Virus record (IMG/VR): IMGVR_UViG_3300017971_000001
Location: 181,277 to 245,276 of that record
Strand: one strand, 5' to 3'
Length of the DNA: 64,000 nucleotides
The notes under the pieces are model-generated. The model was not told where the DNA came from and ran no database searches. It was given only the letters and a program-made list of their open reading frames with translations. Shown piece after piece: positions 39,229-60,509 of the stretch. Positions within the stretch are counted from its first letter, which is position 1. Each line of letters opens with the position of its first letter. Made by a program: the position numbers and the translations under genes.

Positions 39229-39531
39229 ATGGATCGACAGCAACCCTACACCCCGTGGGTCGAAGCGCCTACGGGCTTGACGGTTCCGCCTCGGCAGCTG
39301 CCGGCGGCGCACGTCAACCAGTTGAGCAATCCGCGCCTGCTCGAGCAGCAGCGCGGCATGGCCCAATTGGCGGTAGGTGCTGCTGGATTCCTCCTCGCCG
39401 GCTACCACGGCTACCGGCGGAACGACTCCTACCTCTGGGGCCTGCTGTGGGGTCTCGGCGGATTCACTTGTCCTGTGGTGACGATTCCGATCGCCATTTC
39501 GCAGGGTTATGCCAACCCACTCAAGGGGTAG
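39229..39531 (+). CDS. Small two-TM membrane protein
   Basis: LAVGAAGFLLAGYHG and LWGLLWGLGGF. Confidence 0.72.
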   Translation: MDRQQPYTPWVEAPTGLTVPPRQLPAAHVNQLSNPRLLEQQRGMAQLAVGAAGFLLAGYHGYRRNDSYLWGLLWGLGGFTCPVVTIPIAISQGYANPLKG

Positions 39532-39533
39532 TC

Positions 39534-41039
39534 ATGCTCAGCTTCAACGAGCTCCAGGGCTTTGCCCAGGCCCACTCTGGTGACTACCGGTTCGGGCTTG
39601 ACGGCCGGAAGAAGGCGTGCTGCAGCAGCTGCGCGCACAACGGTCCGTGTGAAGGCGACAGCCACCAGCACGGGCTCGGGCGTCCGATCGATATCAACGA
39701 CTGGAAGAAGTGGATTCGTCACGAAGAAGCCGACACCATGCCGCCTGGGTTCCCTCCCCCCGCCCGTAGCTTCAGCCCGGCCTTCTCGGGACTCCGTGGC
39801 GCTACGGTCCTTACAGGCGAAGGGGATATGGACGATCCTCTGGACGCGCCACCGCTCGGGTACAAGTACGTCCAGACCACCAAGCCAAACACGACGGTCA
39901 TGGCGAAGCCCATGGGCGTTGTTCCGAAGCAGAGGCGGCGCGACGTCACGCGCATGATCGAGGAGCTCGAGTTCCTCGCGGCGACCCCCGGCGTCCACCC
40001 TCGCGCCCTCGCTTCCAAGATCTGGCAGGCGCGCAAGGCGCTCATGGAGAGCCAGGACTGGAGCTACGCCAGCTACAGCAATCCGCGCATGCGCTACGAC
40101 AGCAAGCGCGATCTGGAGGCGCGCCTTGCCTCGGTCGAGCGAGTCCTGGGTGTGGGCGACGTCAGCCCCAAGACCTTCGCGTTCTTCTACGGCATGGGCG
40201 GTCTGGGCAGGTGGCAGGGCCAGCAGGATCCGATCAAGAAGCTCGCGCAGTGCATTCAGGGGGCGATCTGCTTCCCGAAGGGCTACTGCTGCCCGTCTGG
40301 GACGCACTTCGACGAGCCCTACTACGACGACCCGCTCTACTTCGATCAGGGCTATCCCGAATACCCTGAGTACGGATACCCGGAGACCGGCGATCCTCGC
40401 CTTCCGCCGCCCATGGGCGACCCGCGTCAACCCCCTCCCTTCTTCGAGGAGACGTGGGGCGAGCCGCGTCGTCCGGGTGAGACCTATATCCCCGGACCCA
40501 AGTTGACCGAGCGCGGCCCCGTTACCTCGATCCCGGGCGCTCCGATCACGAGCATTCCTGGCGGATCGATCGGACCCGCCGGCGCCATTTCCACCGGCGG
40601 TGGAAAGATCGGACCTGCGAACGCTGGCCTGATCGCTGCGGGCGGGGTCGCTTCCGGTGCCGCGGCATCCATGCCCAACTCGGGCGCCGGTCCTGGCTCG
40701 ATCCTTCCTGGCGGAACGAAGACTTCGACTTCGACGGGCGGATCGCTTTCGGTGGACGAGGCGGTCAAGGCAGTCTCCATGCCGAATCAAAAGAAGTCCG
40801 TTCAGCTGCTCAAGCCAGGCACGGGAATCCTTTCGCGCCCGTATGTCGGCGCGCCCGAGCTCGTGCAGACGGGCCCTTCGGCTCAGGACTTTCAAGAAGC
40901 AGAGCGTCAGCGCCGCGCCGCTCGTCCCGGTTGGGGCGGAGGCGACGGCGGCGGAAGCATGGTCTCCCTGGGAGGCCTCTCTGCCCTGCAGCACAGCATG
41001 AACGCGGCCCGCATTGCGGCTCGCCGCCGGCGGAGGTGA
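39534..41039 (+). CDS. Cys/Pro/Gly-rich putative virion protein
   Basis: ATG 39534; CCSSCAHNGPC, MGGLG, CIQGAICFPKGYCC; Arg tail. Confidence 0.75.
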   Translation: MLSFNELQGFAQAHSGDYRFGLDGRKKACCSSCAHNGPCEGDSHQHGLGRPIDINDWKKWIRHEEADTMPPGFPPPARSFSPAFSGLRGATVLTGEGDMDDPLDAPPLGYKYVQTTKPNTTVMAKPMGVVPKQRRRDVTRMIEELEFLAATPGVHPRALASKIWQARKALMESQDWSYASYSNPRMRYDSKRDLEARLASVERVLGVGDVSPKTFAFFYGMGGLGRWQGQQDPIKKLAQCIQGAICFPKGYCCPSGTHFDEPYYDDPLYFDQGYPEYPEYGYPETGDPRLPPPMGDPRQPPPFFEETWGEPRRPGETYIPGPKLTERGPVTSIPGAPITSIPGGSIGPAGAISTGGGKIGPANAGLIAAGGVASGAAASMPNSGAGPGSILPGGTKTSTSTGGSLSVDEAVKAVSMPNQKKSVQLLKPGTGILSRPYVGAPELVQTGPSAQDFQEAERQRRAARPGWGGGDGGGSMVSLGGLSALQHSMNAARIAARRRRR

Positions 41040-42142: not shown

Positions 42143-43492
42143 ATGCACCGACGCGAATACAACCCCCGCTACTCGTTCTCCGAGCCGCGCCCAAACCCTG
42201 ATTGGCACCCGGGCGGTGGCATGCGGATCGGGGGTCGGTATCGCCCTGGCAGCGGACGCTTCCATGCGCACCGCGGATCGGGCTATCGCCACGGCGGCGG
42301 CCGTCGCTACGACGGCGAGTACTACCCCGGCGGTGGCTACTACCCCCAAGCCAATCCTGCGGTCGCCGGTATTCAGATCGGCGACAAGGTCATGCCGGCC
42401 TCGCGCTTCCATGCGCGCCGCTGCCCCTTCGTGCGCGGCCGCGTCGTCGACCTGAAGCACAAGAAGTACGGCGACCTCGCTCGCGTCGAGACAGAAGACG
42501 GTCGGATCGTGACCGTCACGCTCGACACGATCAAGCGCTGCGGCATGCGCACGCGCAGCAACCCGCGGCGTGTCCGTCGCAACTGGGTCCCCAGTCACTG
42601 GAACGAGTGCGAGTCCTGCGGCAACCGGTGCTATCCGCACGAGCGCCTGTGCGTCTACTGCGAGCAGGCTGAGTTCGATCGCCTGCCGGGTCATATGACC
42701 GAGCTCAAGCGTTGCCCGAAGTGCGACCGCTTCGCATGCCTCGGCGGGCGTCACTGCAAGCCTCGGCCTCGCGGTTCTGGCCCCGGCCCCTACCTCGAGA
42801 ACCCTTACGCCTCCAGGGCGAAGGCGAAGGAACTCGCGCGCCTGGTCGAGTCCAAGCCAGGAATCCGCAAGATCGCTCGCCGGACCTACAGCCACGGCAC
42901 GGTCCCCCGCGAGGTCGAGTGCGAACTCGAGCCCCTCGGGCCGTCCATGCTGCTCGGTAGTCGTCGCTACGGGCGGACCAAGGGTGGCATGGTCGACTCC
43001 TACGCCAAGGAGTTCGACTTCCCTGCCCCCAACGAAGAGGAGCGGAAGTTCGTTGTCTGCAAGGGCGCGAACGAAATCGAGGCTGTCGCTGACGCATTGC
43101 CTCCGGGCCGCGGCTTCAAGAAGCGGCTTGAGTCCGCGCTCTCGACGAAGCGCTTCCAGGGCAAGCTCCCCGTGCAGAAGCGAATCGATCGAATCATGAA
43201 GGGCGGCATGCTGACGCAGCGTCAGACGACTGCGTTCTTGAAAAGCACGGACGCTGATCGCCTCTACGAGTTGGCGGAGCTCAAGCGCCGGGTCGACCGC
43301 GTCTTCTACCCGAGTATGCGGAAGCTGCTCATGCACGAAGAGGTTTCGGAGAAGCTGAGGCCCGCCCCGGCCCGCAAGAAGCGTTCGACCAAGAAGAAGG
43401 CTGGCAAGAAGGTCAGCAAGAAGAAGGTCGCCGCCGCTAAGAAGAAGGCCAAGAAGAAGACGACCAAGAAGCGTCGCCGGCGGGGTGCTTAA
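42143..43492 (+). CDS. Basic NP-segmented protein with SH3/KOW-like and Cys-finger modules and Lys tail
   Basis: NP junctions separate a Gly/Tyr region, IQIGDKV..GRVV..VTV, CESC/CVYC/CPKC and a KK-rich tail. Confidence 0.78.
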   Translation: MHRREYNPRYSFSEPRPNPDWHPGGGMRIGGRYRPGSGRFHAHRGSGYRHGGGRRYDGEYYPGGGYYPQANPAVAGIQIGDKVMPASRFHARRCPFVRGRVVDLKHKKYGDLARVETEDGRIVTVTLDTIKRCGMRTRSNPRRVRRNWVPSHWNECESCGNRCYPHERLCVYCEQAEFDRLPGHMTELKRCPKCDRFACLGGRHCKPRPRGSGPGPYLENPYASRAKAKELARLVESKPGIRKIARRTYSHGTVPREVECELEPLGPSMLLGSRRYGRTKGGMVDSYAKEFDFPAPNEEERKFVVCKGANEIEAVADALPPGRGFKKRLESALSTKRFQGKLPVQKRIDRIMKGGMLTQRQTTAFLKSTDADRLYELAELKRRVDRVFYPSMRKLLMHEEVSEKLRPAPARKKRSTKKKAGKKVSKKKVAAAKKKAKKKTTKKRRRRGA

Positions 43493-44775
43493 TGGCCGCT
43501 CGCAAGAAGCGCGCCAAGCGCGCCAAGAAGAAGGTTCCGGGGCCGCGTCGGTATCACATTGAGCGCGCTATGGGCTGGGTCGATCACGGACTCGCTCACC
43601 CGGGCGAGCACGAGCACGCTTTGCGCGAGGCGCACGATCACCTGGTCCATGCCAAGCAGGCAAGGCGGAACCCTCGCCGTCTACCCGTGCGCAGCAACCC
43701 CATGCTGGCAGTTGTTGGCAATCCGCCTCGGCGTCGTCGCGTTCGCCGCAACCCCATGCTCGCGATCGTCGGGAATCCGCACGAAGAGGAAATGACCCCG
43801 GGCGCCATGCGCCGCCGGATCACCGAACTCAAGCTCGAGCTTGACGACGCGAAGTACTTCAAGCACTCGCCTATGCGGATCGCAGGACTCGAAGACGAGA
43901 TCGCCGAACTCGAAGACGCGCTTGACGCTGCAGAGGAACAGTTCGAGCGTAGGTCGCGCGCTGGACTTTCTCGCTCTCGCGTTGAAGACGAGCGCCGCCG
44001 TGAGCGCGAGCGCTACATGCGCGATCGCCGGCGCAACCCGCGTCCTGAAGTTCACCCGCTCGCCTACGAAGCGCGCCGCCGTTACCACGAAGACCTCATG
44101 GCAGGCCATGGAGACGCCGCTGAATACTGGCGCGGCCAGGCCGGGGCGTTCTTCACGGACGCGGTTCACCCCGACTACATGCGCGAGATCTACGAACTCG
44201 AGCAGCGCGAACTCGAACGCCGGAACCGAAACGCGACTGGCAAGCGCGCCAAGAAAAAGTCTGGCCGCAAGGGTGGCAAGAAGTCCAAAAAGCAAGTTGC
44301 AGGGCCAGGCGGACGGGATAGCTTGAAGAAAGAGGGCAGGAAGGTTCGCAAGAATCGGACTGCAGGGAAGTCCAAGAAGGCGAAGCCAAAACTCAAGCGC
44401 TACACGCTCGAGGAAGCCAGGAAGAAGTTCGAAGGATTCGACGAAGCGCTGAAGGCCTACAAGCGTTTTCACAAAGCGAATCCGAGCCACGTCGACGTCT
44501 ACGAAATTGACGACGGCAAGCCTGGCAAAACGGTTGACCGAGTTCATGCAGCACTCCACCGGACAGTCGAAACCAACTACCTCGTGCCTGACGGCTGGGA
44601 GTCCAACAAGAATGGCTCCCTCTGGAAGCACGAGCACGTTGAAGGCTTCAGCCTCGACAACCCCGTTGGCGAACCTGATCCGGAAGACTTCCCGCTCGAA
44701 GTGCTCGACCCAGCAACCGGCACGACTCGCAAGTTCGGCGGTCGCTTCCGCGTCACGACGTGGTGGTACGACTGA
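43492..44775 (+). CDS. Basic NP-repeat protein
   Basis: Eight NP; duplicated R(S/R)NPMLA(V/I)VGNP; TAATG overlap. Confidence 0.8.
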   Translation: MAARKKRAKRAKKKVPGPRRYHIERAMGWVDHGLAHPGEHEHALREAHDHLVHAKQARRNPRRLPVRSNPMLAVVGNPPRRRRVRRNPMLAIVGNPHEEEMTPGAMRRRITELKLELDDAKYFKHSPMRIAGLEDEIAELEDALDAAEEQFERRSRAGLSRSRVEDERRRERERYMRDRRRNPRPEVHPLAYEARRRYHEDLMAGHGDAAEYWRGQAGAFFTDAVHPDYMREIYELEQRELERRNRNATGKRAKKKSGRKGGKKSKKQVAGPGGRDSLKKEGRKVRKNRTAGKSKKAKPKLKRYTLEEARKKFEGFDEALKAYKRFHKANPSHVDVYEIDDGKPGKTVDRVHAALHRTVETNYLVPDGWESNKNGSLWKHEHVEGFSLDNPVGEPDPEDFPLEVLDPATGTTRKFGGRFRVTTWWYD

Positions 44776-44787
44776 GCGAGGTGCGCT

Positions 44788-46641
44788 GTGTATCTGATCC
44801 CTGTTCTCAATCCGCCGCCCAGCGCCATGCCCCTCGCTGGGACCAAGACGAAGCGCAAGCCCAAGCGGGCCGCGCCCAAGAAGACCAAGTCGGCCGGGAG
44901 GAAGTCCGTGGCTAAGAAGAAGGTTCGCAAGAACAGCAGCCGCAAGCGCACGAGCAGCTACTCCGGTGGCCGCGCTCAGCGCAAGCGCTACCCCAGCGGC
45001 AAGCGCCGCAACCTGACCTGGGTCGAGGCTGCGCGATCGTCTGGCGCGGTCTACACGCCGAACTCGCTCATGACCAAGAAGGACGGCCGCGGTCGGCTGA
45101 AGTTCGTCCCGGTCACGAGCGGCAAGGTCGGTAAGCCCATGTCGAAGCAGGACGCGCTCGCGGCCAAGCGCCCGGTCGTCGGCTTCCTACCCAAGTGGCT
45201 GATCGACTTCTGGTACGACTCGGGCGCTGCGGACATGAAGACCGCGCGTCAGCAGAAGAGCAAGAAGTACAAGGACGCGGTCCAGTACTTCAACGCGGCC
45301 CAGAAGGCGCTCGCCGAGCAGCGGAAGAAGCGCGGCACCAGCTGGAAGCGCGCGACCCAGTACAAGACCAAGGGCCGCGGCAAGAACAAGAAGAAGGTCC
45401 GGGTCCCGGACTTCGAGATCCTGGACGACGGCTCGGTCAAGTTCCGATCGGGCCGTGGTCCCAAGACGTCAATCACCCTGTTTCGAGGCTTTGCTCCGTC
45501 GGAGGTGCAACAGCGGCACCTCATTGAAGGCGGTTTCGCGGGCAAGGCTGGACCTGGAGGAGGTCGCGTGAAGCTGAACCGAAAGCGGAAGCGCCGGGCG
45601 AAGGTTCGCAAGAACCCGGCGCGTAAGAAGAAGGCCGTGAGCAAGAACAAGCCACGGCGTAGCAAGAAGAAGACGAAGAGTCGGAAGAAGAGCCGCCGTC
45701 GCGCGGTCCTGAACAACCGGCCCAAGTCCAAGCGTCGGAAGAAGGCGACGAAGCGCAAGGCCGCGCGCCGCAAGAGCACGAAGCGTCGGAAGAATCCTGC
45801 GCGCAGCCGCAAGCGGCGCGTGCGGAAGAACCCGGCTCGCAAGTCGCACTCGCGCAAGCGTCGTCGTCGCAAGAGCAGCGCTCTGAGCCGGGTTCGCCAG
45901 AACCCCATGGGCGCGACCAAGAAGAACCCCATGGGCGCGCTGAAGCAGTACCTCGACAAGCTGCAGACCGCTTCGCCCTACGTCACTGGCGCTCACCTCG
46001 TGATCGGCATGGGCGTCAGCGGGCTCTTCTGCGGCGGTCTCCGTCAGTTCCCCGTCGTCGGGCGGATCTTCAGCCTTCGTGGTCGTTACCTGGGCGCCGC
46101 CGGCCGTTTCGCCGGTTGCCTCGGCGCGGCTTCGCTGGCTGGCCTGACCGGAACCCTGCTCGAGCGCACCCTGGGCAAGAACGTCAAGTTCCTCCAGAAC
46201 GCTGGCGGCAACTTCTTCGTGGCTGGTGTCGCCCTCGCGGTCGGCAACCTCCTCCTCGAGCTCATTCCCGGCGCCTCGTCGATCCTGCCTGGGATCAGCA
46301 ACCCCCGCGGCATGCGCACCATGCGGCACATGTCCATGGCGGCTCCGGCCGGCGAAGAGGGCATGGGCAGCTACGGCAGCAGCGTCCTGAGTCCCGAGGA
46401 CCTGGTCGCTGGCGAGTCGAGTGCCCGTCTGACCAACGAGTTCCACGGCATGAGCGACTTCCTGGAGCTCAGCGGCATGGGCTCGTCGGGCGGTCAGCCG
46501 ATTCCGATCGAGGACCTGCGCGGCTACCCCGGCTGGTATGGCGGTGGCAACTCGATCTCGGGCATGGGCGACTACATGGAGCTCAACCCGACCGCTCCCC
46601 TCGTCACCGACGGGTTCAACCCCGGCACCGAGAACTTCTAG
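44788..46641 (+). CDS. Very basic NP-repeat protein with hydrophobic segment and C-terminal G(M)G motifs (core-precursor-like)
   Basis: Three RKNPAR, RQNPMG, KKNPMG; LSGMG and ISGMG near the C-terminus. Confidence 0.8.
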   Translation: MYLIPVLNPPPSAMPLAGTKTKRKPKRAAPKKTKSAGRKSVAKKKVRKNSSRKRTSSYSGGRAQRKRYPSGKRRNLTWVEAARSSGAVYTPNSLMTKKDGRGRLKFVPVTSGKVGKPMSKQDALAAKRPVVGFLPKWLIDFWYDSGAADMKTARQQKSKKYKDAVQYFNAAQKALAEQRKKRGTSWKRATQYKTKGRGKNKKKVRVPDFEILDDGSVKFRSGRGPKTSITLFRGFAPSEVQQRHLIEGGFAGKAGPGGGRVKLNRKRKRRAKVRKNPARKKKAVSKNKPRRSKKKTKSRKKSRRRAVLNNRPKSKRRKKATKRKAARRKSTKRRKNPARSRKRRVRKNPARKSHSRKRRRRKSSALSRVRQNPMGATKKNPMGALKQYLDKLQTASPYVTGAHLVIGMGVSGLFCGGLRQFPVVGRIFSLRGRYLGAAGRFAGCLGAASLAGLTGTLLERTLGKNVKFLQNAGGNFFVAGVALAVGNLLLELIPGASSILPGISNPRGMRTMRHMSMAAPAGEEGMGSYGSSVLSPEDLVAGESSARLTNEFHGMSDFLELSGMGSSGGQPIPIEDLRGYPGWYGGGNSISGMGDYMELNPTAPLVTDGFNPGTENF

Positions 46642-46856: not shown

Positions 46857-47495
46857 ATGACCATGCGCGTTGTCCCCATTCCCGCGATCGGCGCCGTTGG
46901 CAGCCGCCCCCGCAAGGAGCCGATCTACGACACTGAGGGTTGGGCTCCGGCCGTCCCCCAGCCGTCCGAGATCGTCACCTTCGTCAACTTCTCGGGCTTC
47001 AACACTGGTGGCCTGTCGCTGCAGAAGTCCTTCGGCCGCGACACCAATCTGCAGGGTCAGAATGGTCTGCCCGCTGCACACCACCACTACTGGTATGGCC
47101 TGCGTGTCAAGATCCGCTCGCTCGACGCGGACCTCGGCACGGCCGCCAACGTCGTGGTGTTCGAGGAGATCAACCGGATCCGTGAGCTCGGCTTCACCCA
47201 GTTCCGGTTCGCCAGCAGCGAACTGATCACCGTGCAGGCGGACGAGGCCCCCAGCGGCACCGGCCCCGCCTACGCGAACACGACCCACTCGGCCGCGACG
47301 ATCCTGTCGCTCCCGAGCGGCGTGCCCACCCGCGGAAACGCGAAGGACGTCACGATCAGCGGCCGCCCGGTCGAGATCGTGGCCCTCGAGGCCTTCCGTG
47401 TCGTCTACGGCACCCCCACCGGGATCACCCCGACCGTGTCGCTGTACTGCAGCGTGATCCTCGAGGGTCTGCTGCTGCGCGGAATCACCGGCTAG
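46857..47495 (+). CDS. Single jelly-roll-like capsid protein (candidate major capsid protein)
   Basis: AGGAG RBS, ATG 46857; PIYDT..RDTNLQGQNGLP..YGLRV..LEGLLLR beta-rich pattern; strong terminator after it suggests high expression. Confidence 0.62.
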   Translation: MTMRVVPIPAIGAVGSRPRKEPIYDTEGWAPAVPQPSEIVTFVNFSGFNTGGLSLQKSFGRDTNLQGQNGLPAAHHHYWYGLRVKIRSLDADLGTAANVVVFEEINRIRELGFTQFRFASSELITVQADEAPSGTGPAYANTTHSAATILSLPSGVPTRGNAKDVTISGRPVEIVALEAFRVVYGTPTGITPTVSLYCSVILEGLLLRGITG

Positions 47496-47532
47496 AAGGT
47501 CTCCTTCTAAAGTCGTGCCATTAAACGGCTTG

Positions 47533-47563
47533 AACAGCCGGCCCGGTAACGGGCCGGCTGTTT
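47533..47563. terminator. Perfect inverted repeat, likely bidirectional terminator
   Basis: AACAGCCGGCCCG-GTAA-CGGGCCGGCTGTT. Confidence 0.85.
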
Positions 47564-47570
47564 CCATTTT

Positions 47571-49205
47571 ATGAAAGGTCTTCTTCTTCGAGTGACGATA
47601 GGCTCGATCCCTAGAAGGAGGCTCTGCATGAAGTGGAGAGGTCAGACTTTTGAGGGTGAGTCTTTCTACCTTCTTGGCTTGATAGCTGCGGACGGATACG
47701 TGGCGAAAGAAGGGGGAAGCAACCAAAGCAAGGTGTCGATCAACTGCGGCAATTCCGCCGGAGATCAAAAGTTCGCAAAGTATGTCGCCCGCTTGATTGA
47801 TTCAACGTGGGGGCAGAGATTCGGATTTTCATGCACGCTTCGCCATGTGGATCGGAGGCCGCCTCGCGTTCCTTACTGGGAGCCCCATTGCTGCTCCAGG
47901 TCCTTGGCAGGCGCCATTAGGAAATTTTGCGAAGGTCGAATCGGAACGTATTCCTGGCGAATCCCGCCCGCCCTCTTGAGGAGTCCTGGGCCTGAGCTTT
48001 TGTCTTGGATCCAGGGCTTCGCGGACGGAGACGGGACCGTATCCGTCAAGCCGCCCAAGAGGGAGGTGAGAATTTCAAGTGTGAACCGAGAGGGGATTGA
48101 AGATATCAGGCGCGCCCTGTCTCACTTTTCAATCAGCGCGAAAGTTTACGAGCACGATCGCGAGATCGAAAACTGGGAGCCCTCTATAAACATAGTCATT
48201 TGCGACCGCCGCTCGCTTGAGATCTACGCTCAGAAAATCGGATTCCGCCAACCCGACAAGAAGCGCAAGCTCGCCGAGGCGCTTGCGTCCTACAAGCGCG
48301 ATCATGCCAACCTACTTCGACATGAGGTCGAAGATCTGCTGCCCGAAGTGATCCGCAGGCGAGCATGCGGCGAGTCCTTCGCTGAGATCCAGGAGGCGCT
48401 CGAGCTCGCAACCGTCGAAGTTCCTAAGGGCATGCTCAAGCGCGCCGTTCGCTCTGCCAGGGGCAAGTGTGTCGTCTGCCTCAAGTCCCCTGCCACGCAC
48501 TCGATCCCCCGCGTGGTCCGAGGGCGGAGCGGCAAGTATGCCTGCGATCCGTGCCTGATCGAGCTCGAGCCCAAGGAGGAATGGGGCGAGGAGTTCGTCC
48601 AGCTGAAACTTCGAGAGGTTGCAGATTTCCTCGACGAGAACCATTACCTCGGGCGCCGCTCGAGCCGGAACGCGTTCGCGCTGCGGAACAAGCACGGCGT
48701 GCTCGTATTCTCCCGCAAGCCTCAGGCGAGCTCGCTCCCCCGTGACTGGCTCGAGCTCTCGCGCTGGTGCATTGTCTCGGACGACATGAACGCGGGGACG
48801 AAGCAGTGGTCTCGCGCCAAAGCTTGGCTTCGCGAGAACACCGAAGCGACGACCGTCGTCACCTACTCCGATCCGTCCCGGCACGACGGATCGCTGTATC
48901 GAGCGGCAGGGTTCCTTTGGGCTCCTTCTTCTCAGTTCCTGCTCAAGAACTTGTCGCTCACTGGGGAGCGTCACCCGGGCAAGCCTTACGTGGACAAGAA
49001 CCGCTGGGTCTACCCGCTTCGACCCGACGCCCGGCGCGCCGAGGCGCTGACGGTCCGTCACCCTTGGCTTTACAACAGCGACGAGCTCAAGTTCCTCTGC
49101 GACTGGCCGGAGCCGAAGTGGCGCGGTCGCGGCACTCGCTTCTCCGGCGGCGGCAAGGACTACCAGCGCTGGAAGGAGCTTCTCCAGGAGCGATCGAACT
49201 CCTAG
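47571..49205 (+). CDS. LAGLIDADG endonuclease-like domain fused to a Mom-like (GNAT-fold) DNA-modification domain
   Basis: YLLGLIAADG and WIQGFADGDG; CVVC..CDPC; FLDENHYL..LELSRWC..VVTYSDP..HDGSLYRAAGF; start may be ATG 47628. Confidence 0.72.
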   Translation: MKGLLLRVTIGSIPRRRLCMKWRGQTFEGESFYLLGLIAADGYVAKEGGSNQSKVSINCGNSAGDQKFAKYVARLIDSTWGQRFGFSCTLRHVDRRPPRVPYWEPHCCSRSLAGAIRKFCEGRIGTYSWRIPPALLRSPGPELLSWIQGFADGDGTVSVKPPKREVRISSVNREGIEDIRRALSHFSISAKVYEHDREIENWEPSINIVICDRRSLEIYAQKIGFRQPDKKRKLAEALASYKRDHANLLRHEVEDLLPEVIRRRACGESFAEIQEALELATVEVPKGMLKRAVRSARGKCVVCLKSPATHSIPRVVRGRSGKYACDPCLIELEPKEEWGEEFVQLKLREVADFLDENHYLGRRSSRNAFALRNKHGVLVFSRKPQASSLPRDWLELSRWCIVSDDMNAGTKQWSRAKAWLRENTEATTVVTYSDPSRHDGSLYRAAGFLWAPSSQFLLKNLSLTGERHPGKPYVDKNRWVYPLRPDARRAEALTVRHPWLYNSDELKFLCDWPEPKWRGRGTRFSGGGKDYQRWKELLQERSNS

Positions 49206-49383
49206 CAAACGCTCCCAACAAAGCAAACGCGCACTTGGAACTCGGTGGCAGGGCCAGGCAGGTCGTTTAGCCTCGAGATAGAGAACGTCTGCACCCGCAG
49301 GCAGACCGACAACTTCTCTTCTCTGGCGGGGCTCGTCGGTCCGCGGCGGGCCGGCGAGCGCCGCCGATTCCAAGGAGCACTCC

Positions 49384-50826
49384 ATGCCCGCTCACACGTC
49401 CACGGTCAGCCAGGGCTGGGGAGCCACGCACACCTGCGCCTACTGCCATGGCTTCGGCAGCATTCCGCCCCTGATTCGCGGCAGCGACGGGCGAATGCAT
49501 ATCAATCCCGACTACGAAATGGTGAAGCGGTTCCACCTCGCCGCTGAGCCGTTCGGGGAGACGCTCGGACCTGGCGAGTCGCGCACGTTCACGTTCACGG
49601 TTCCCGCCGAGGAGGAAGGTCTGGGCGACCTGCTGGTCAACGAGTTCTTCGCGCTCTACGAGCCCGAGGGGATCCGCAACGTCTTCGTCGACTTCCTCAA
49701 CCTGCAGACCGATCGCCTGTTCCAGAACGCGCCCGTCCCCACGACGCTGATCATGGGCAACGCGCACCTCAACACCTGCCTGCCCTGCTGTTTCCTGATC
49801 CAGGCGACCAACAGCCTGCAGGTTCGCGTGCGCAACGAAGAGTCGACCGACATTCAGGTTCGTCTCGTCGCCCGCGGCAAGCGCTTCCTGACTCGCGACC
49901 ACGAACTCCGCGCGCGCATGCTCCAGTACTGGAACATGCTCCCCAGCTACAGCTACTTCCTCACACTCGACGAAGAGGAGGTTGTGGTCCCTGCCGGAGA
50001 GACCGTCAGCGCGACCATGAAGGTTCCTGGCCACGGAGACTTCGAAGTCAAGTGGCCGCGCTGTGAAGTGCTGAACGCGGCGACGGGCGCGCAGGAGAAC
50101 GCCAACGGCATTCTGGTCACCGTCGCCGAAGGGATCGGTCGTCAGTGGCAGAGTGATCCGCTCCCGCTCGGCGCGTTCGTCGCGACACCGACGCTCGACG
50201 TGGCCGGGTTCCCGGGCGGGATCTACCGCGCTGCCAGCGCTGGCCACTGCCCCAGCTACACCCAGCTGTTCAAGCGAAACACGTTCGTCCGTCACACGTT
50301 CGAGAACACGAGCGGCACCGACCTGATCGTTCGTCTGACCTACGCTGGCTGCTTCCACCAGGTCGACGAGTGCCCGCCCGGACGCTCGATCGATCGGATC
50401 CGCAGTCTCGAGCCGACGATCGGTCCCATGCTGATCCCGCAGGGCGACTACTGCGCCCCGCAGCAGCAGTACTACCCCGAGGAGCCCTTCTACAACGAAG
50501 AGCCGATCTATCAGTCCCCTCAGGCTTCGGGCGGAATGCAGCCGCCTGCTCAGCAGCCGGGCGGGAGCGCGATCTTCACGACGGTCCCTGGCGGAGCGGG
50601 CTCGGTCCAGGCTGGCGGCCCCAGTAGCTACGTCCCCAAGTACTACGAGGCCGGCGGCGGCGGCATGGCCGTCCCTAAGGCTGAGATCGCCAAGGCGCAC
50701 GGCCTCAAGCCCGGCCAGGTTTACGCTCCCGGCTTCCGCGGAATGCAGGGCATGGGCGCTGGCCCTGTGATCCGCCGCGGGCCCTACGTCTGGGATCCGA
50801 TCGCTCGGACCTGGAAGCGAGGCTAG
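49384..50826 (+). CDS. Double jelly-roll-like capsid protein, paralog 1
   Basis: Two similar beta-rich halves each ending ..L..(R/A)G(K/C)(R/F); NAPVP..IMGN..LP..LQVRVRN; C-terminal MQGMG. Confidence 0.7.
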   Translation: MPAHTSTVSQGWGATHTCAYCHGFGSIPPLIRGSDGRMHINPDYEMVKRFHLAAEPFGETLGPGESRTFTFTVPAEEEGLGDLLVNEFFALYEPEGIRNVFVDFLNLQTDRLFQNAPVPTTLIMGNAHLNTCLPCCFLIQATNSLQVRVRNEESTDIQVRLVARGKRFLTRDHELRARMLQYWNMLPSYSYFLTLDEEEVVVPAGETVSATMKVPGHGDFEVKWPRCEVLNAATGAQENANGILVTVAEGIGRQWQSDPLPLGAFVATPTLDVAGFPGGIYRAASAGHCPSYTQLFKRNTFVRHTFENTSGTDLIVRLTYAGCFHQVDECPPGRSIDRIRSLEPTIGPMLIPQGDYCAPQQQYYPEEPFYNEEPIYQSPQASGGMQPPAQQPGGSAIFTTVPGGAGSVQAGGPSSYVPKYYEAGGGGMAVPKAEIAKAHGLKPGQVYAPGFRGMQGMGAGPVIRRGPYVWDPIARTWKRG

Positions 50827-50829
50827 TCC

Positions 50830-52326
50830 ATGACGTTTCCAGTCGAACCGCCGGTGATCCTCGAGTACGGCATGGGGGACTGCCGGACGTTCATGAACAT
50901 TCCGCCCCTCGTCCATTGGGACGACGGGTCGACGTGTATCAACCCTGACTTCGACGCGGTGACCAAGTTCCACCTCGCCGCCAAGGGGATCGAGTTCGCG
51001 GACCGGAGTCTCGTGACTAACGTCACGATCAACCCCGGCGAGACGGTCGACTTTCAGCTGACCGTCGAGCGTGAGGAGAACGGCCTCGGGCACCTTCTGA
51101 TCAACGAGCTCCTGATTCTGACGAACCCTGAGGGCGCGACAGACCTGACGGTTCAGATCAAGTCGATCCAGGGCGACAGCACCTACATGAACGGGCCGAC
51201 GCCGATCACGCACGTGTTCGGCAACGCGCACCTCAACTGCTGCCTGCCCTGCCCGATCATGCTGTATCCGAATCAGACCTTGATCCTCAAGGTGACCAAC
51301 AATGAGGCCTTCTCGGTCTCGACTCGGATCACGGCCCGCGGCAAGCGGTTCATGCCCTACCACAACATGAGCCTGATCTCCGAGCTCGAGCGCTGCTGGT
51401 CCATGAACCCGAGCTCGCCCTACTTCGCGAGCTTCGACCAGGGCCCGATCACGGTTCCTGCCAATGGAACCGCGCAGGGGCAGATTACGATCCCCGGGGG
51501 CGGCTGGTTCCAGATCGAGTACATCCGCAGCACGCTCGGCTCAAGCGACTTGATCGTTGACGTGACCGAGGGTCGGATCGGCAAGCGCTACATGAACCGC
51601 CCGGTCCGACTGGGCCTCTATGCCACCGAGGACCTGCAGATCACTGGATTCCCGGGCAACCTGTACCGCGCAGCCTCGGCCTGCCACTGCCCGCCGGTCC
51701 AGCAGTTGGTTCGCGGAAACATTCGCATGATCCACGACTTCACCAACCCGACCGGCGCTCCGATCACGGTGAACCTCACCTATGTCGGCTGCTTCCACAA
51801 GGGGGTTGATATCTGCCCGCCGCAGAAGGACCTCGACCGCGTTCGCCGGCACCAGCACATGATCGACTGCTGCGGAGGCGAGCTCTTCCTGGACCTCGCA
51901 GACGAGGAGCCGTGCCCGCCCGCCTCTGTGCCCGCGTTCACTTCGGAGTATCTGAAGTTTGCGGAGGACGGCGAGACCCCCTTCCCACGTCCGCTTGAGC
52001 AGAACATGCCTGCGCCTGAGCCCGTGCCTCAGGTCAAGCAACTGTGGCAACCGGGGGACCACGGCGCGCCGATCTCGCCCATGCAGCTTCCGCCCGATCA
52101 GGCGTACGCGATCAACCATGCTGGCCGCCTCGCGGTCGTGCAGATCGATTCGCAGCGCCGCCCGATTCGCTACGTGCGTCCGGAAGAGCTCCCTATGGGC
52201 ATGGACGCCTCCTACTCCATGTATCGTGCCAACTTTGGGGATCAGGACCCTGAGTTCCGCAAGTGGCTCGCCTCCCAGGGGGGTGGGGTCAGCGGACTGG
52301 GTCAAGGTGAATGGGAGGCACTCTAG
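50830..52326 (+). CDS. Double jelly-roll-like capsid protein, paralog 2
   Basis: Colinear with 49384 (INPD..KFHLAA, GNAHLN.CLPC, RGKRF, Y.GCFH); C-terminal VSGLG. Confidence 0.7.
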   Translation: MTFPVEPPVILEYGMGDCRTFMNIPPLVHWDDGSTCINPDFDAVTKFHLAAKGIEFADRSLVTNVTINPGETVDFQLTVEREENGLGHLLINELLILTNPEGATDLTVQIKSIQGDSTYMNGPTPITHVFGNAHLNCCLPCPIMLYPNQTLILKVTNNEAFSVSTRITARGKRFMPYHNMSLISELERCWSMNPSSPYFASFDQGPITVPANGTAQGQITIPGGGWFQIEYIRSTLGSSDLIVDVTEGRIGKRYMNRPVRLGLYATEDLQITGFPGNLYRAASACHCPPVQQLVRGNIRMIHDFTNPTGAPITVNLTYVGCFHKGVDICPPQKDLDRVRRHQHMIDCCGGELFLDLADEEPCPPASVPAFTSEYLKFAEDGETPFPRPLEQNMPAPEPVPQVKQLWQPGDHGAPISPMQLPPDQAYAINHAGRLAVVQIDSQRRPIRYVRPEELPMGMDASYSMYRANFGDQDPEFRKWLASQGGGVSGLGQGEWEAL

Positions 52327-57932: not shown

Positions 57933-60509
57933 ATGGCTCAGGTTAGTCTTTTCACGCGCAGTGCGGGGCGCTCAAACCTGCGCGGGCTCGACGAGTCCGC
58001 AGATCAGGTTCTGGTAAGCCAGATCGAGGGCACGGAAGCCGCCCGCTCTTTGTGGGCGGACACGGCCGCGACGAGCGCCAACCTCGCGACCGGAACGAAC
58101 ATTACCGCGGTCCAACTGGGCGCCGCGGCCTCGACCGTCACGGTGCCTGGAAACCTGACGATCAACGGAACGACGACCACGGTCAACACGACCAACCTCA
58201 CGGTCACCGACGCGCTGATCTACGCCAACGACGGTGGCGCGGACCCCAGCTTTGCGGGTATCGCGTGGGACCAGGGCGCGGCGCTCGACGTGATCACGGT
58301 CTGGAACCCGACCAACAGCCGGATCGAGTTCGGTCGATTCAACACGGTCGGAGGAACGTCGGTCCCCGCAGCCGCTCTGACCACCCTGAGTGACGTTCGT
58401 GTCAACGACCTCTCTCTGGCAGGCACGGAGATCGCCGGCGATTCGGCCGTCACGGTTTCGGCCGCGACCGGATCGGTCACTCTCGACGCCGCTGCCGCCG
58501 GATCGGTCAACTTCGACGTCAACGGTACGACCTTTTGGCAGGTCACGTCCGGCGGTGACTTCACTGCTTTCACCGACGACCAGGACGACATTGGAACGCC
58601 GAGCGCCGGGCGCCCCGCCAACGTCTACGTGTCCAACAGCGCTGTGATCGGCGACGCGAACACAGTGACGGTCAACGGGACTTCGGTCTCGGCGAGTTCG
58701 GACCTTACGATCGAGTCGGATCAGACCACGGACTCGACGCTGACGATCCAGTCGGGTGACGCGATCGAGATCAGCGCCGGCCAGAACAGCGGAGCCGGTG
58801 ACGTCACCGTGTTCGGCGCTGGTCTCGGCACGTTCGGCGTGGGAAGCAACGCCTCCCTCTCGGACTTCATGCTGAGGATCGACAACAACAGCACCGTGAC
58901 CCTTGCCGCTGGCTCCGGCGCCGATCTCTCGCTCGGCTCGGGCGGAACGCAGTGGGTGATCGACAACGCCAACGGCGACCTCTACACGCCGGACAACGTC
59001 GATATCGGTGAGGCGACCCAGGCCAACAGCCCGGACAACATTTACGCCGCGACCAGCGTCACGGTCGGGACCACGGTCACGATCACGACCAACGCGGTGA
59101 CCGGCAGCGCCGGCCTAACGGTGGACACGGCCGCGGCCCTTAGTCTCGGAACGGCCACTGCGACGTCAATCACGATCGGCCGCTCGGGCGTTCTGACGGA
59201 CTTCCCCAGCGGTTCGTCCGTGGACTTCACGGGCGCCACTGTGACCGGCTTGGCGCTCGGGGCCAGTAGCTTGGCGGCGACGCTTGCGGTCGGTAACACC
59301 ACGGGCGGCAACGACATTATCTTCACCAGCGGAGACGTGATCCAGGGTGAAGACGCGGCGGCCGGCGGCAACCTGGCTCTGAATGGCGGCGATTCGTCGG
59401 CCAGTAACAACGCCGGCGGCGCAGTTTCCGTGATCGGCGGCGTGGGCAATGGTTCCGGGGCCGGTGGCGCGCTTACGCTTACCGGCGGCCTGGCTGGCGC
59501 CACGGGAGGCGGCGGCAACATTGTCATGTCCGGCGGCGCCGGAATCGCGGGTATCGGCGGCGCGGTCACGATCTTCGGTGGTCAGTCGGGAGGGGCGAAC
59601 CAAGGCGGAAACGTTATTGTCCGCGCCGGTGCTGCGGCAAACGCAGCCGGAGCTACGCCCGGAACGCTCACGCTCGACGGCGGCGACTCGAGCGGATCCA
59701 GTGGCGCGTCTGGCGGGAACGTCGTGATCACAGGTGGCGATAGCGGCGCTTTTTCCCAGTCCGGCGGAACTGTCTCGATCACGGGCGGCACCGGCTTGGT
59801 CACGGATAACGCCGGCGGCGCAGTCAGCGTCACGGGCGGTCCGGCGATTGGCGGCGACAACGCCGGCGGCGCGGTCTCTGTGACAGGCGGGTCGAGCACG
59901 GGCACGGTCAACGGAGCCGACGTCACGGTCGCCGGCGGTTCGGCTACGGGAACCGGCGTCGACGGTCGGGTGATCTTCACCTCGGGCGGGACGACTTACG
60001 GGCTCACTGCTTCGGGCGTCTCCGGCCCCGCGCTCACGACCACAGCCCAGACTGTGATCGAGGCGATCAACGAGGTCAACGCTAGCGCGGCGACCTTCAC
60101 CCAGACGTTCACCAACAACACGGGTTCGGCGATTCTCGAGGGCGAGGTTCTCGCTCCCAGTGCTACGACCGCAGGTGAGATCGTTCTGGGCGACGCCTCG
60201 TCCGACAACAACGCTTCGCTGGTCGTTGGCTTCGGACCTTCGGGCGGCATTGCTGACGGCGCCTCGGGCGGAGTCTTTAGCGTTCGCGGTCAGTTGGTCA
60301 CCGCTCGCTTCGACGCCTCGCTCACGCTGGCTGAGGGCGAGCTCGTCTTCCTCTCGGAGACTGCGGGCCGAATCACGAACGTGGTCCCGACGACCGTGAA
60401 CACCGTCGCGCAGCAGGTTGGCTGGATCACGGACACGCTCAGCTACGACGGCACGACCGACTTCCTGGCCCAGATCTTCTTCATGGACGGCCCTCGGCTC
60501 GTCAACTAG
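57933..60509 (+). CDS. Long Gly/Thr/Ser-rich spike or fibre protein
   Basis: Repeated GG(A/N/T)V.(I/V).GG units; cement-like C-terminal domain. Confidence 0.8.
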   Translation: MAQVSLFTRSAGRSNLRGLDESADQVLVSQIEGTEAARSLWADTAATSANLATGTNITAVQLGAAASTVTVPGNLTINGTTTTVNTTNLTVTDALIYANDGGADPSFAGIAWDQGAALDVITVWNPTNSRIEFGRFNTVGGTSVPAAALTTLSDVRVNDLSLAGTEIAGDSAVTVSAATGSVTLDAAAAGSVNFDVNGTTFWQVTSGGDFTAFTDDQDDIGTPSAGRPANVYVSNSAVIGDANTVTVNGTSVSASSDLTIESDQTTDSTLTIQSGDAIEISAGQNSGAGDVTVFGAGLGTFGVGSNASLSDFMLRIDNNSTVTLAAGSGADLSLGSGGTQWVIDNANGDLYTPDNVDIGEATQANSPDNIYAATSVTVGTTVTITTNAVTGSAGLTVDTAAALSLGTATATSITIGRSGVLTDFPSGSSVDFTGATVTGLALGASSLAATLAVGNTTGGNDIIFTSGDVIQGEDAAAGGNLALNGGDSSASNNAGGAVSVIGGVGNGSGAGGALTLTGGLAGATGGGGNIVMSGGAGIAGIGGAVTIFGGQSGGANQGGNVIVRAGAAANAAGATPGTLTLDGGDSSGSSGASGGNVVITGGDSGAFSQSGGTVSITGGTGLVTDNAGGAVSVTGGPAIGGDNAGGAVSVTGGSSTGTVNGADVTVAGGSATGTGVDGRVIFTSGGTTYGLTASGVSGPALTTTAQTVIEAINEVNASAATFTQTFTNNTGSAILEGEVLAPSATTAGEIVLGDASSDNNASLVVGFGPSGGIADGASGGVFSVRGQLVTARFDASLTLAEGELVFLSETAGRITNVVPTTVNTVAQQVGWITDTLSYDGTTDFLAQIFFMDGPRLVN

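What the first reader, a model, noticed from the sequence alone, without database searches (positions are those of the whole stretch)
47571..49205. LAGLIDADG endonuclease fused to a Mom-like DNA-modifying domain, inserted in the capsid operon
Seen: two LAGLIDADG-like motifs, an HTH/Zn-finger linker and a Mom-like C-terminal domain in one frame. The 5' part looks more AT-rich than its neighbours, no intein splice residues were seen, and it sits between the terminator and the DJR genes. Known: Mu Mom modifies adenine to block restriction, and homing endonucleases are mobile. Inference: a selfish nuclease carrying its own protective modifier (restriction-modification-like), or a site-targeted modifier.
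Basis: partly seen in the sequence, partly recalled or inferred. Interest (0 to 1): 0.68.

Follow-up and report, generated by a model that had tools for sequence, protein, structure and literature searches.

The report
Mobile LAGLIDADG nuclease fused to Mom
A 245-kb uncultured virus encodes one real protein that joins a homing-type DNA-cutting domain to a Mom-type DNA-adenine-modifying domain, and the gene comes and goes at one fixed spot among related viruses, so it looks like a mobile nuclease that carries a DNA modifier with it.

Summary
It has four parts: a two-motif LAGLIDADG core (I-DmoI-like fold, both catalytic acidic residues kept), a three-helix HTH, an invariant four-Cys zinc ribbon, and a Mom-family GNAT domain. 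Mu Mom (8bv8) is the best structural match (Z 12.7), and six of seven key Mom residues are kept.

The fusion is not an assembly artefact. Nine further intact copies (51-97% identical) exist, all in the same slot. A strain about 5% divergent, from another study, also keeps the frame.

Four related loci have a clean empty site: the next gene follows p225 directly, and similarity ends exactly at the p225 stop codon. Presence is patchy on the flanking-gene tree. The nuclease half's tree strongly contradicts that tree, whereas the Mom half is more conserved and its tree is star-like.

Best reading: a free-standing homing-endonuclease gene physically coupled to a DNA modifier. This is a new LAGLIDADG variant of the nuclease-Mom fusions already noted for REase domains, and found here also with HNH and GIY-YIG. 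Activities, target site and the self-protection idea are untested. The "DJR/capsid" label of the neighbours is unverified.

The parts
46857..47495 (+). p225: highly conserved upstream gene (58-90% aa identity among relatives). The cassette begins right after its stop codon. It carries ORF-less group I introns in some relatives.
47498..47507 (+). First copy of the short motif (RGGGYCTTCYNC-like; here GGTCTCCTTC), directly after the p225 stop. Present in seven of eight occupied loci, absent from empty sites.
47532..47570 (+). Intrinsic-terminator-like hairpin (14-bp stem, 10 GC pairs, 47532-47563) plus T-rich tail.
47577..47586 (+). Second copy of the motif (GGTCTTCTTC) after the terminator, upstream of the fusion gene. 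Conserved in position in the occupied loci.
47615..47621 (+). Shine-Dalgarno AAGGAGG, 6 nt before the ATG at 47628.
47628..49205 (+). Fusion gene, 525 aa (M20 of the 544-aa ORF): LAGLIDADG core, HTH, zinc ribbon and Mom-family domain.
47628..48245 (+). Two-motif (monomeric) LAGLIDADG nuclease core, aa 20-225. Motif 1 is at 47670-47696 (catalytic D41) and motif 2 at 48009-48035 (catalytic D154). I-DmoI-like fold.
48318..48458 (+). Three-helix HTH-like linker (aa 250-296), pLDDT about 80-84. Together with the core it resembles the WhiA arrangement.
48468..48554 (+). Zinc ribbon, C300-x2-C303 ... C325-x2-C328. The four Cys and the surrounding ATHSxPRV..GR are invariant in seven homologs.
48573..49202 (+). 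Mom-family GNAT domain (aa 335-544). Key residues: H358, Y359, R398, T410, D434, H438, Y443.
49313..49370 (+). CTTCTCTTCTCT followed by a GC-rich hairpin, upstream of the next gene. The same element is present in the empty-site locus L014 and in other occupied loci, so it lies outside the cassette's right-hand side.
49384..52326 (+). Downstream paralog pair cp1 (49384-50826) and cp2 (50830-52326), used as the flanking marker.

Best explanation
This is a free-standing (intergenic) LAGLIDADG homing-endonuclease gene whose product is physically coupled to a Mom-family DNA-adenine modifying enzyme. The coupling runs through a conserved HTH and zinc-ribbon linker.

Proposed working:
1. In mixed infections of related jumbo viruses, the LAGLIDADG core (helped by the HTH and zinc ribbon) recognises a long site near the p225/cp1 junction of genomes that lack the cassette, and cuts it.
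2. Recombinational repair from the cassette-bearing genome copies the cassette in, directly behind the p225 stop codon.
3. The Mom domain transfers an acyl or aminoacyl group to N6 of adenines in the virus's double-stranded DNA. By homology with Mu Mom the donor is probably a charged tRNA.
4. This protects the DNA from host restriction. Because the modifier is never made without the nuclease, it probably also protects the DNA from the protein's own nuclease.
5. That benefit keeps the selfish nuclease from decaying.

Shown here: the domain identities and folds, retention of catalytic residues, occupied and clean empty alleles at one site, patchy distribution, recombination of the nuclease half, and stronger constraint on the Mom half.

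Inferred: cleavage, the target site, the chemistry and sequence context of the modification, and self-protection.
For: Architecture:
- Pfam LAGLIDADG_3 at 8.4e-19 and Mom above its gathering score; PHROG Mom-like at 1.4e-11.
- AF2 of the N-half has pLDDT 80-90, and Foldseek finds I-DmoI (TM 0.75 by target) and intein endonucleases.
- AF2 of the Mom domain on a 92-sequence alignment has pLDDT 94.8. The top hit is Mu Mom 8bv8 (Foldseek E 1.8e-5; VIA Z 12.7, 154 residues aligned, reaching model residue 199). Other GNATs score Z <= 9.9 and cover the core only.

Catalytic residues:
- D41 and the acidic residue at position 154 are kept in all seven aligned copies, although the nuclease core is only 31-57% identical among most of them.
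- The equivalents of Mu H58/Y59, R111, S124 (Ser or Thr), D149 and Y159 are invariant or nearly so in 92 family members.

Real fusion:
- Nine further intact copies in the same slot.
- Contigs from several studies span the gene, including a strain about 5% divergent that keeps the frame.

Mobility:
- Four loci have p225 followed directly by cp1, with no remnant of the gene. Similarity ends exactly at the p225 stop codon.
- The empty locus L014 is nested (97/94) among occupied lineages, and occupied L003 lies outside them with empty L016 and L021. At least three changes are needed.
- The nuclease-half tree rejects the flanking-gene clades (p-AU 3.7e-5, 5e-80, 3e-36).
- L003's flanks are far more divergent (p225 58-63% against 85-90% for the others). 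Its fusion gene is as similar to the others as they are to each other.

Context typical of homing elements:
- ORF-less group I introns in the adjacent p225 of relatives.
- Two LAGLIDADG inteins elsewhere in the genome.

Precedent:
- Jumbo-phage Mom domains fused to REase domains were predicted to act as restriction plus protection pairs (PMC7824862).
- Mom fusions to GIY-YIG, HNH and REase modules were found here.
- Free-standing HEGs sit between conserved phage genes (PMC2988022 and PMC10448857).
Against: - No activity was tested, and no target site can be named.
- Presence and absence could also reflect repeated deletion of an old resident gene rather than homing. The Mom-half tree is unresolved and rejects nothing.
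- The empty loci are contig fragments, so a copy elsewhere in those genomes cannot be excluded.
- Mu R151, essential in Mu Mom, has no clear equivalent. This subfamily instead has an invariant His at the position of Mu R154, so the chemistry may differ.
- Stand-alone relatives of the Mom domain (42-55% identical) work without any nuclease, so the fusion is not needed for modification.
- LAGLIDADG enzymes with intact acidic residues can still be inactive.
Confidence: 0.55

Rival explanations
1. Domesticated nuclease scaffold. The LAGLIDADG core, HTH and zinc ribbon no longer cut. They serve as a long-site DNA-binding module that delivers the Mom domain to one or a few specific places, such as a regulatory or packaging site. 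The protein would be a site-targeted DNA modifier, and the presence/absence pattern would reflect ordinary gene loss.
For: - The LAGLIDADG + HTH arrangement resembles WhiA, a domesticated LAGLIDADG transcription factor (Foldseek hit 8dy9_I).
- The linker is well conserved (54-72%).
- The gene is intact in all ten copies, which is unusual for purely selfish HEGs.
Against: - Both catalytic acidic residues are kept in every copy despite low overall identity of the core, whereas WhiA-type proteins have lost them (established knowledge).
- The nuclease half recombines between lineages.
- The empty sites are clean.
- Stand-alone relatives of the Mom domain need no targeting module.
Confidence: 0.15
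2. Restriction-modification-like weapon without homing. The Mom domain marks the virus's own DNA genome-wide. The nuclease attacks unmarked DNA of the host or of competing viruses, as proposed for REase-Mom fusions of jumbo phages. The gene is an accessory defence or offence gene that is gained and lost, not a gene drive.
For: - The published prediction for REase-Mom fusions (PMC7824862).
- Recurrent fusion of Mom to several nuclease classes.
- The slot after the gene also collects other accessory genes in L002 and L031.
Against: - LAGLIDADG enzymes recognise long, rare sites (established knowledge), which suits homing or exclusion of close relatives rather than bulk degradation of foreign DNA.
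- The exact same insertion point recurs in lineages with very different flanks.
- The nuclease phylogeny is incongruent with the flanks. Both of these last points fit homing or gene conversion better.
Confidence: 0.2
3. Decaying hitch-hiker. A LAGLIDADG gene once inserted in frame upstream of a resident, useful mom gene. Only the Mom half is now functional, and the nuclease half is drifting towards loss.
For: - The nuclease half is far less conserved than the Mom half (35-53% against 60-74%).
- In the window it has a lower GC3 (0.66 against 0.82).
Against: - No copy has a stop, a frameshift or a lost catalytic residue.
- No relative shows a stand-alone mom gene in this slot. Empty sites lack both halves.
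- The nuclease halves fall into two well-supported types that are exchanged among lineages. That indicates active turnover rather than decay.
Confidence: 0.08

Closest known systems
REase-Mom fusion proteins of group 2 jumbo phages (Iyer et al. 2021, PMC7824862)
   Same: One polypeptide joins a Mom-family GNAT domain to an endonuclease domain, in a jumbo virus. It was predicted to combine self-protection by adenine modification with DNA cleavage.
   Different: The nuclease here is a two-motif LAGLIDADG core with an HTH and a zinc ribbon, not a PD-(D/E)xK restriction fold. It recognises long sites and shows homing-type presence/absence and recombination at one intergenic site. This architecture formed a single 50% cluster in an exhaustive search.
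Phage Mu Mom (PDB 8bv8; Silva et al. 2026, PMC13219725)
   Same: GNAT fold with the Mom-specific C-terminal elaboration (Z 12.7). Equivalents of H58, Y59, R111, S124, D149 and Y159 are present.
   Different: Only about 16-18% identity. The R151 equivalent is missing and there is an invariant His at the R154 position. W48, needed for the Mu dimer, has no equivalent in a by-eye alignment. The domain is fused to a nuclease, and no Com-like regulator was seen. Donor and product are unknown.
Free-standing homing endonucleases of phages (T4 Seg and Mob; F-CphI next to the psbA intron; PMC2988022, PMC2790892, PMC6083498, PMC10448857)
   Same: An intergenic gene between conserved genes, present or absent among relatives at the same site, next to a gene that carries ORF-less group I introns in relatives, with a terminator just upstream.
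   Different: Those are GIY-YIG, HNH or Endo VII-type enzymes without any DNA-modifying domain. Here the nuclease is LAGLIDADG and carries a Mom domain in the same chain.
I-DmoI and intein endonucleases PI-PfuI / TliVMA / PI-SceI
   Same: Monomeric two-motif LAGLIDADG fold (TM 0.75 to I-DmoI). The closest sequence relatives are intein-type endonucleases (1dq3 at E 3e-8; NCBIfam intein-containing models).
   Different: No Hint or splicing domain and not inside an intron. It has an extra HTH, zinc ribbon and Mom domain.
WhiA (domesticated LAGLIDADG + HTH transcription factor)
   Same: A LAGLIDADG core followed by a helix-turn-helix (Foldseek hit 8dy9_I).
   Different: WhiA has lost the catalytic acidic residues and is a chromosomal regulator. 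Here they are kept in all copies.

Membership tests
LAGLIDADG endonucleases (monomeric, two-motif) | Two LAGLIDADG motifs in one chain | tested here: met
   LLGLIAADG (aa 34-42) and IQGFADGDG (aa 147-155). Pfam LAGLIDADG_3 at 8.4e-19 with two stretches.
LAGLIDADG endonucleases (monomeric, two-motif) | Catalytic acidic residue at the end of each motif | tested here: met
   D41 is invariant, and position 154 is D or E in all seven aligned copies.
LAGLIDADG endonucleases (monomeric, two-motif) | Pseudo-dimeric alpha-beta-beta-alpha-beta-beta-alpha fold | tested here: met
   AF2 pLDDT 80-90 over aa 30-240. Foldseek finds I-DmoI at E 1e-9 with TM 0.75 by target.
LAGLIDADG endonucleases (monomeric, two-motif) | Site-specific double-strand cleavage with 4-nt 3' overhangs | not testable with these tools
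   Needs a biochemical assay.
Homing endonuclease genes (mobile element) | Occupied and empty alleles at the same site in related genomes | tested here: met
   Nine distinct occupied loci against four clean empty loci. Similarity ends at the p225 stop codon and there are no remnants.
Homing endonuclease genes (mobile element) | Phylogeny incongruent with flanking genes (horizontal spread) | tested here: met
   The nuclease-half tree rejects the cp1 clades (p-AU 3.7e-5 to 5e-80). The distribution is patchy. The Mom half is unresolved.
Homing endonuclease genes (mobile element) | Cleaves the empty allele and is copied into it | not testable with these tools
   Needs cleavage mapping and co-infection crosses.
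Mom family (GNAT superfamily, PF25680) | Sequence match above the curated threshold | tested here: met
   33.5 bits against a gathering score of 27.1. PHROG 1384 at 1.4e-11. All homologs carry PF25680.
Mom family (GNAT superfamily, PF25680) | GNAT fold with the Mom-specific extension | tested here: met
   Model pLDDT 94.8. 8bv8_B gives Z 12.7, rmsd 3.4 and 154 residues aligned over model residues 3-199. Other GNATs score Z <= 9.9 over residues 3-150.
Mom family (GNAT superfamily, PF25680) | Residues important in Mu Mom: H58, Y59, R111, S124, D149, Y159 | tested here: met
   H358, Y359, R398, T410 (Ser or Thr in all), D434 and Y443 are invariant or nearly so in 92 sequences. R111, S124, D149 and Y159 were aligned by hhalign; H58/Y59 by eye.
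Mom family (GNAT superfamily, PF25680) | R151, essential in Mu Mom | tested here: not met
   The aligned position is Ser. An Arg lies next to it in the fusion clade only. This subfamily has an invariant His at the position of Mu R154.
Mom family (GNAT superfamily, PF25680) | Gly-tRNA(Gly)-dependent N6-adenine modification of dsDNA | not testable with these tools
   Needs LC-MS and in-vitro assays as in PMC13219725.
Inteins | Hint splicing domain with N-terminal Cys/Ser and C-terminal HN plus a nucleophile | tested here: not met
   No Hint or intein-splicing family at E <= 1. NCBIfam intein models match only the endonuclease part. The genome's own two inteins do show the CxH...HN/C pattern.
WhiA-like domesticated LAGLIDADG proteins | Loss of the catalytic acidic residues | tested here: not met
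   Both acidic residues are kept in all copies.
   No Pfam, PHROG, NCBIfam or PDB sequence match. The Atlas structure neighbours are viral hypothetical proteins and GH172 at TM 0.39/0.51.

The most novel reading that the evidence does not exclude
A single-chain 'homing restriction-modification' element. The Mom domain covalently hypermodifies an adenine inside (or near) the LAGLIDADG recognition site of the carrier genome, for example in the near-invariant 3' end of p225. The carrier would then be immune while unmodified relatives are cut and converted. If so, it would be a natural gene drive that immunises its own genome chemically rather than by disrupting the target. It would also be a natural long-site-directed DNA adenine acylating enzyme. 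More broadly, Mom domains would be a standard partner of all the main homing-nuclease classes (LAGLIDADG, GIY-YIG, HNH, PD-(D/E)xK).
Probability: 0.2. Interest if true: 0.85.

Novelty: new variant of a known kind. Interest (0 to 1): 0.62.

Why it matters
- Nuclease-Mom fusions have been predicted to work as restriction-plus-protection pairs but have not been studied. This one uses a long-site homing nuclease.
- It comes with natural occupied and empty alleles, two exchanged nuclease types and a conserved modifier. The question [quoted passage not shown] is therefore directly testable with a handful of synthetic genes and PCR products.
- It extends the partners of Mom (shown in 2026 to use charged tRNA to modify DNA) to LAGLIDADG, and in this survey also to GIY-YIG and HNH nucleases.
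- If the two halves act on the same site, the protein would be a natural template for site-directed DNA adenine modification.
- It also marks a lineage of large, almost wholly unannotated sediment and marine viruses rich in introns, inteins and homing genes.

Tried and rejected
- Assembly or fused-frame artefact: rejected. There are ten independent copies, and contigs from several studies span the gene, including a strain about 5% divergent whose indels compensate each other.
- Intein: rejected, no Hint domain.
- Origin from the genome's own two intein endonucleases: rejected (24% identity, E 0.056).
- Sequence search of the PDB for the Mom half: found nothing. The first full-length AF2 model had a useless Mom half (pLDDT < 50). 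A deep alignment from the exhaustive search was needed.
- Word searches for other proteins of similar length sharing the Mom region: only the same clade.
- Pyrimidine-rich motif as a genome-wide promoter: not supported. Most genomic hits are coding-strand complements of Lys/Glu-rich repeats. It is kept only as a local feature of occupied loci.
- Remnants of the gene in empty sites: none (best tblastn E 0.07).
- Identity of p225 and cp1/cp2: Pfam, PHROGs, NCBIfam, PDB profile searches and the Atlas gave nothing usable.
- Tailed-phage hallmarks in the genome (Terminase_6N, Phage_capsid): no match. The same tool also missed the known Mom domain, so these negatives carry no weight.
- Phage GenBank DNA search of the region: no match.
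- Literature search for LAGLIDADG-Mom or homing endonuclease-Mom fusions: nothing relevant. One cited paper (PMC2995806) is not held.
- Exons of the intron-bearing p225 genes of relatives were compared piece by piece only.
Full report
**What is there**

The window is the last 64 kb of a 245,276-bp IMG/VR virus record with direct terminal repeats. It has about 63% GC. The ORF at 47571-49205 (+) exists.

Its first ATG lies in the T-tail of a strong hairpin terminator (47532-47563, 14-bp stem). The ATG at 47628 (M20) follows an AAGGAGG box by 6 nt. It gives the 525-aa product held in the protein collection, and the homologs start there too. The gene is therefore 47628-49205.

**Domains**

- Pfam finds LAGLIDADG_3 (8.4e-19, two stretches) and Mom PF25680 (33.5 bits, gathering score 27.1). 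PHROGs finds 'Mom-like DNA modification protein' at 1.4e-11.
- No Hint or intein family is present. NCBIfam models of intein-containing proteins match only the endonuclease part.
- An AF2 model on the seven-sequence alignment is confident for aa 20-335 (pLDDT 80-90). It shows two alpha-beta-beta-alpha-beta-beta-alpha halves, a three-helix unit (aa 250-296) and a small ribbon.
- Foldseek matches that model to I-DmoI (TM 0.75 by target), to the intein endonucleases TliVMA, PI-PfuI and PI-SceI, and to WhiA. A profile search of PDB sequences finds PI-PfuI at 3e-8.
- In the alignment of seven copies, D41 (motif 1, LLGLxAxDG) is invariant. Position 154 (motif 2, SGFxDxD/EG) is always acidic. C300, C303, C325 and C328 are invariant.

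**The Mom half**

The Mom half was poorly modelled at first. I collected 13 stand-alone relatives of 173-194 aa at 42-55% identity, found in actinophage-like contigs. I then ran the exhaustive profile search, which gave 1251 hits at E <= 0.001, and built a 92-sequence alignment.

The new model has pLDDT 94.8 and pTM 0.91. Its best match in the PDB is the crystal structure of Mu Mom, 8bv8:
- Foldseek gives E 1.8e-5.
- VIA-align gives Z 12.7, rmsd 3.4 and 154 residues aligned over model residues 3-199. The next GNATs reach Z <= 9.9 and cover only residues 3-150.

I mapped the residues against the Mu Mom sequence, using hhalign and the numbering of Silva et al. 2026 (PMC13219725):

| Mu Mom | This protein | Conservation in 92 sequences |
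|---|---|---|
| H58 / Y59 | H358 / Y359 | invariant / nearly invariant |
| R111 | R398 | invariant |
| S124 | T410 | Ser or Thr, nearly invariant |
| D149 | D434 | nearly invariant |
| Y159 | Y443 | invariant |
| R151 | Ser at the aligned position | no equivalent |

R111, S124, D149 and Y159 come from the hhalign alignment; H58/Y59 were placed by eye on the `HYxxRR` motif. The subfamily has an invariant His (H438) where Mu has R154. The domain is therefore a Mom-family GNAT of a divergent subfamily, and its donor and product cannot be assumed to be those of Mu.

**Not an artefact**

- The word search found six further proteins with the same Pfam pair at 51-61% identity. Later steps added L020, 97% identical to L004 in the Mom half, L031 and L007.
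- Every copy is intact, and every copy lies in the same slot: after the p225 homolog and before the cp1 homolog.
- Contigs of four public runs span the gene. Three runs from three studies may be the source of this DNA. The fourth, from another study, is a strain with 211 differences in 4 kb. Its only indels are two compensating -1/+1 pairs, so the frame is kept.

**Inserted and mobile**

A metagenome scan with the p225 alignment and a tblastn map gave four loci where cp1 follows p225 directly:

| Locus | p225 identity to the window | Gap between p225 and cp1 |
|---|---|---|
| L014 | 85% | about 250 nt |
| L016 | 80% | about 230 nt |
| L021 | 67-79% (gene split by an intron) | about 180 nt |
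| L024 | 47% | about 160 nt |

- These gaps hold no remnant of the gene; the best tblastn hit has E 0.07.
- DNA similarity between occupied and empty loci runs to the p225 stop codon and ends there.
- Seven of eight occupied loci share a short motif (RGGGYCTTCYNC) directly after the stop and again after the terminator. This includes L003, whose flanks are much more divergent. Empty loci have unrelated sequence there.
- On a tree of the flanking cp proteins, the empty L014 is nested (97/94) among occupied lineages. Occupied L003 lies outside them with empty L016 and L021. At least three changes are needed.
- The LAGLIDADG core falls into two types, {window, L004/L020, L006} and {L002, L003, L005, L008}, with 31-37% identity between them.
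- The core's tree rejects three clades taken from the cp tree (p-AU 3.7e-5, 5e-80, 3e-36).
- The Mom half is more conserved (60-75%). Its tree is star-like and rejects nothing.
- L003's p225 is 58-63% identical to the others, which share 85-90% with one another. Yet L003's fusion gene is no more distant than the rest.

Together these results fit a cassette that is exchanged among related viruses at one site, with the nuclease module turning over fastest. The window's nuclease half also has a lower GC3 (0.66 against 0.82 for the Mom half and 0.85-0.90 for the neighbours).

**Surroundings**

- p225 is the most conserved gene of the operon. In relatives it carries ORF-less group I introns: one in L020 and L021, two in L019, and up to four in L022. 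The window's genome has none.
- I compared the exons of those genes piece by piece only.
- The genome also has two classic LAGLIDADG inteins, one in a UvrD-like and one in an SNF2-like helicase. They are not close to the fusion's nuclease.
- A free-standing homing gene next to an intron-bearing conserved gene recalls 'collaborative homing' (PMC10448857, PMC6083498). Free-standing homing genes in intergenic regions between conserved phage genes, some with terminators, are well known in T4 (PMC2988022).

**Comparison with what is known**

- Iyer et al. [quoted passage not shown] They predicted modification as protection and the nuclease as the restriction component.
- Among the 150 best hits of the exhaustive search I found these Mom fusions:
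  - Mom fused to GIY-YIG (P0096, P0123, P0135, P0141). P0135 also has HTHs and a NUMOD-like domain and lies in a phage-like contig.
  - HNH with an HTH (P0102).
  - A weak REase_MTES_1575 match (P0116, P0120, P0171).
  - Several HTHs only (P0139).
  - Treble-clef zinc fingers (P0163).
- The LAGLIDADG-Mom architecture forms one 50% cluster.
- I found no paper describing a LAGLIDADG-Mom fusion. Absence from this library is not proof.
- I therefore rate it as a new variant of a known kind.

**Mechanism**

The best-supported reading is a free-standing homing endonuclease coupled to a DNA modifier (confidence 0.55). The architecture, residues, alleles and phylogenies are shown. Cleavage, the target, the chemistry and self-protection are inferred.

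Rivals:
- A restriction-modification-like weapon without homing (0.20).
- A domesticated scaffold that targets the modifier (0.15).
- A decaying hitch-hiker on a useful mom gene (0.08).

**Limits**

- The 'DJR/capsid' label of cp1 and cp2 could not be tested.
- Negative genome searches for terminase and HK97 capsid are uninformative, because the same tool missed the known Mom domain.
- The empty loci are fragments, so the gene might sit elsewhere in those genomes.

Noticed in passing
L019:5695-5987 and 6174-6470; L020:5666-5962; L021:3862-4153; L022:249-534, 729-1019, 1401-1698, 1782-2016 (homologs of window 46857-47495): The highly conserved gene just upstream (p225) is interrupted by ORF-less group I introns in relatives, up to four in one contig (Rfam RF00028, 34-70 bits). 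The window's own copy and genome have none. A free-standing homing gene beside an intron-rich gene suggests collaborative homing or intron turnover.
   Followed up: partly
G000:167175-170624 (+) and G000:143404-146799 (-), outside the window: Two classic inteins with LAGLIDADG endonuclease domains interrupt a UvrD-like and an SNF2-like helicase gene of the same virus. They are not close relatives of the fusion's nuclease (24% identity).
   Followed up: partly
window 49384-50826 and 50830-52326: The two genes after the fusion are paralogs with a conserved core of about 340 aa and low-complexity tails. Relatives L003, L016, L021 and L024 have a single copy, so the duplication is lineage-specific. 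The fold is unknown; there is only a weak jelly-roll-like hint from the Atlas.
   Followed up: partly
L002:9643-11048 and L031:1952-3357: In two relatives a sulfotransferase, an 82-aa ORF and a dual-specificity phosphatase-like gene sit between the fusion gene and cp1. The slot behind p225 is a hot spot for accessory genes.
   Followed up: no
window 47498-47507 and 47577-47586 (and the same places in L002-L005, L008, L020): A short motif (RGGGYCTTCYNC) occurs right after the p225 stop and again after the terminator hairpin in occupied loci only. Its function is unknown: a cassette end, a regulator site or a recombination scar. It is not a genome-wide motif.
   Followed up: partly
window 43492-46641: Two long, extremely Lys/Arg-rich proteins (427 and 617 aa, with repeated KKxxRK tracts) precede p225. 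They are conserved in synteny but only 30-60% identical among relatives. They may be internal or DNA-binding virion proteins.
   Followed up: no
whole window (about 20 large ORFs, e.g. 27309-30008, 31867-34080, 39255-41039, 57933-60509): None of the large proteins tested has any Pfam, PHROG or NCBIfam match. This 245-kb virus from sediment and marine metagenomes is almost wholly unannotated.
   Followed up: partly
P0096, P0123, P0135, P0141, P0102, P0139, P0163 (proteins from the exhaustive search): Mom domains are also fused to GIY-YIG nucleases (one with HTHs and a NUMOD-like domain, a typical homing-endonuclease build), to HNH, to multiple HTHs alone and to treble-clef zinc fingers. This suggests a general partnership between Mom and homing-type nucleases or DNA-binding modules.
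   Followed up: partly
window 4338-4412: A single tRNA-Leu (anticodon AAG) gene is the only RNA family hit in the window. No tRNA-Gly was seen in the window; that would have been of interest given Mom's use of Gly-tRNA in Mu.
   Followed up: no
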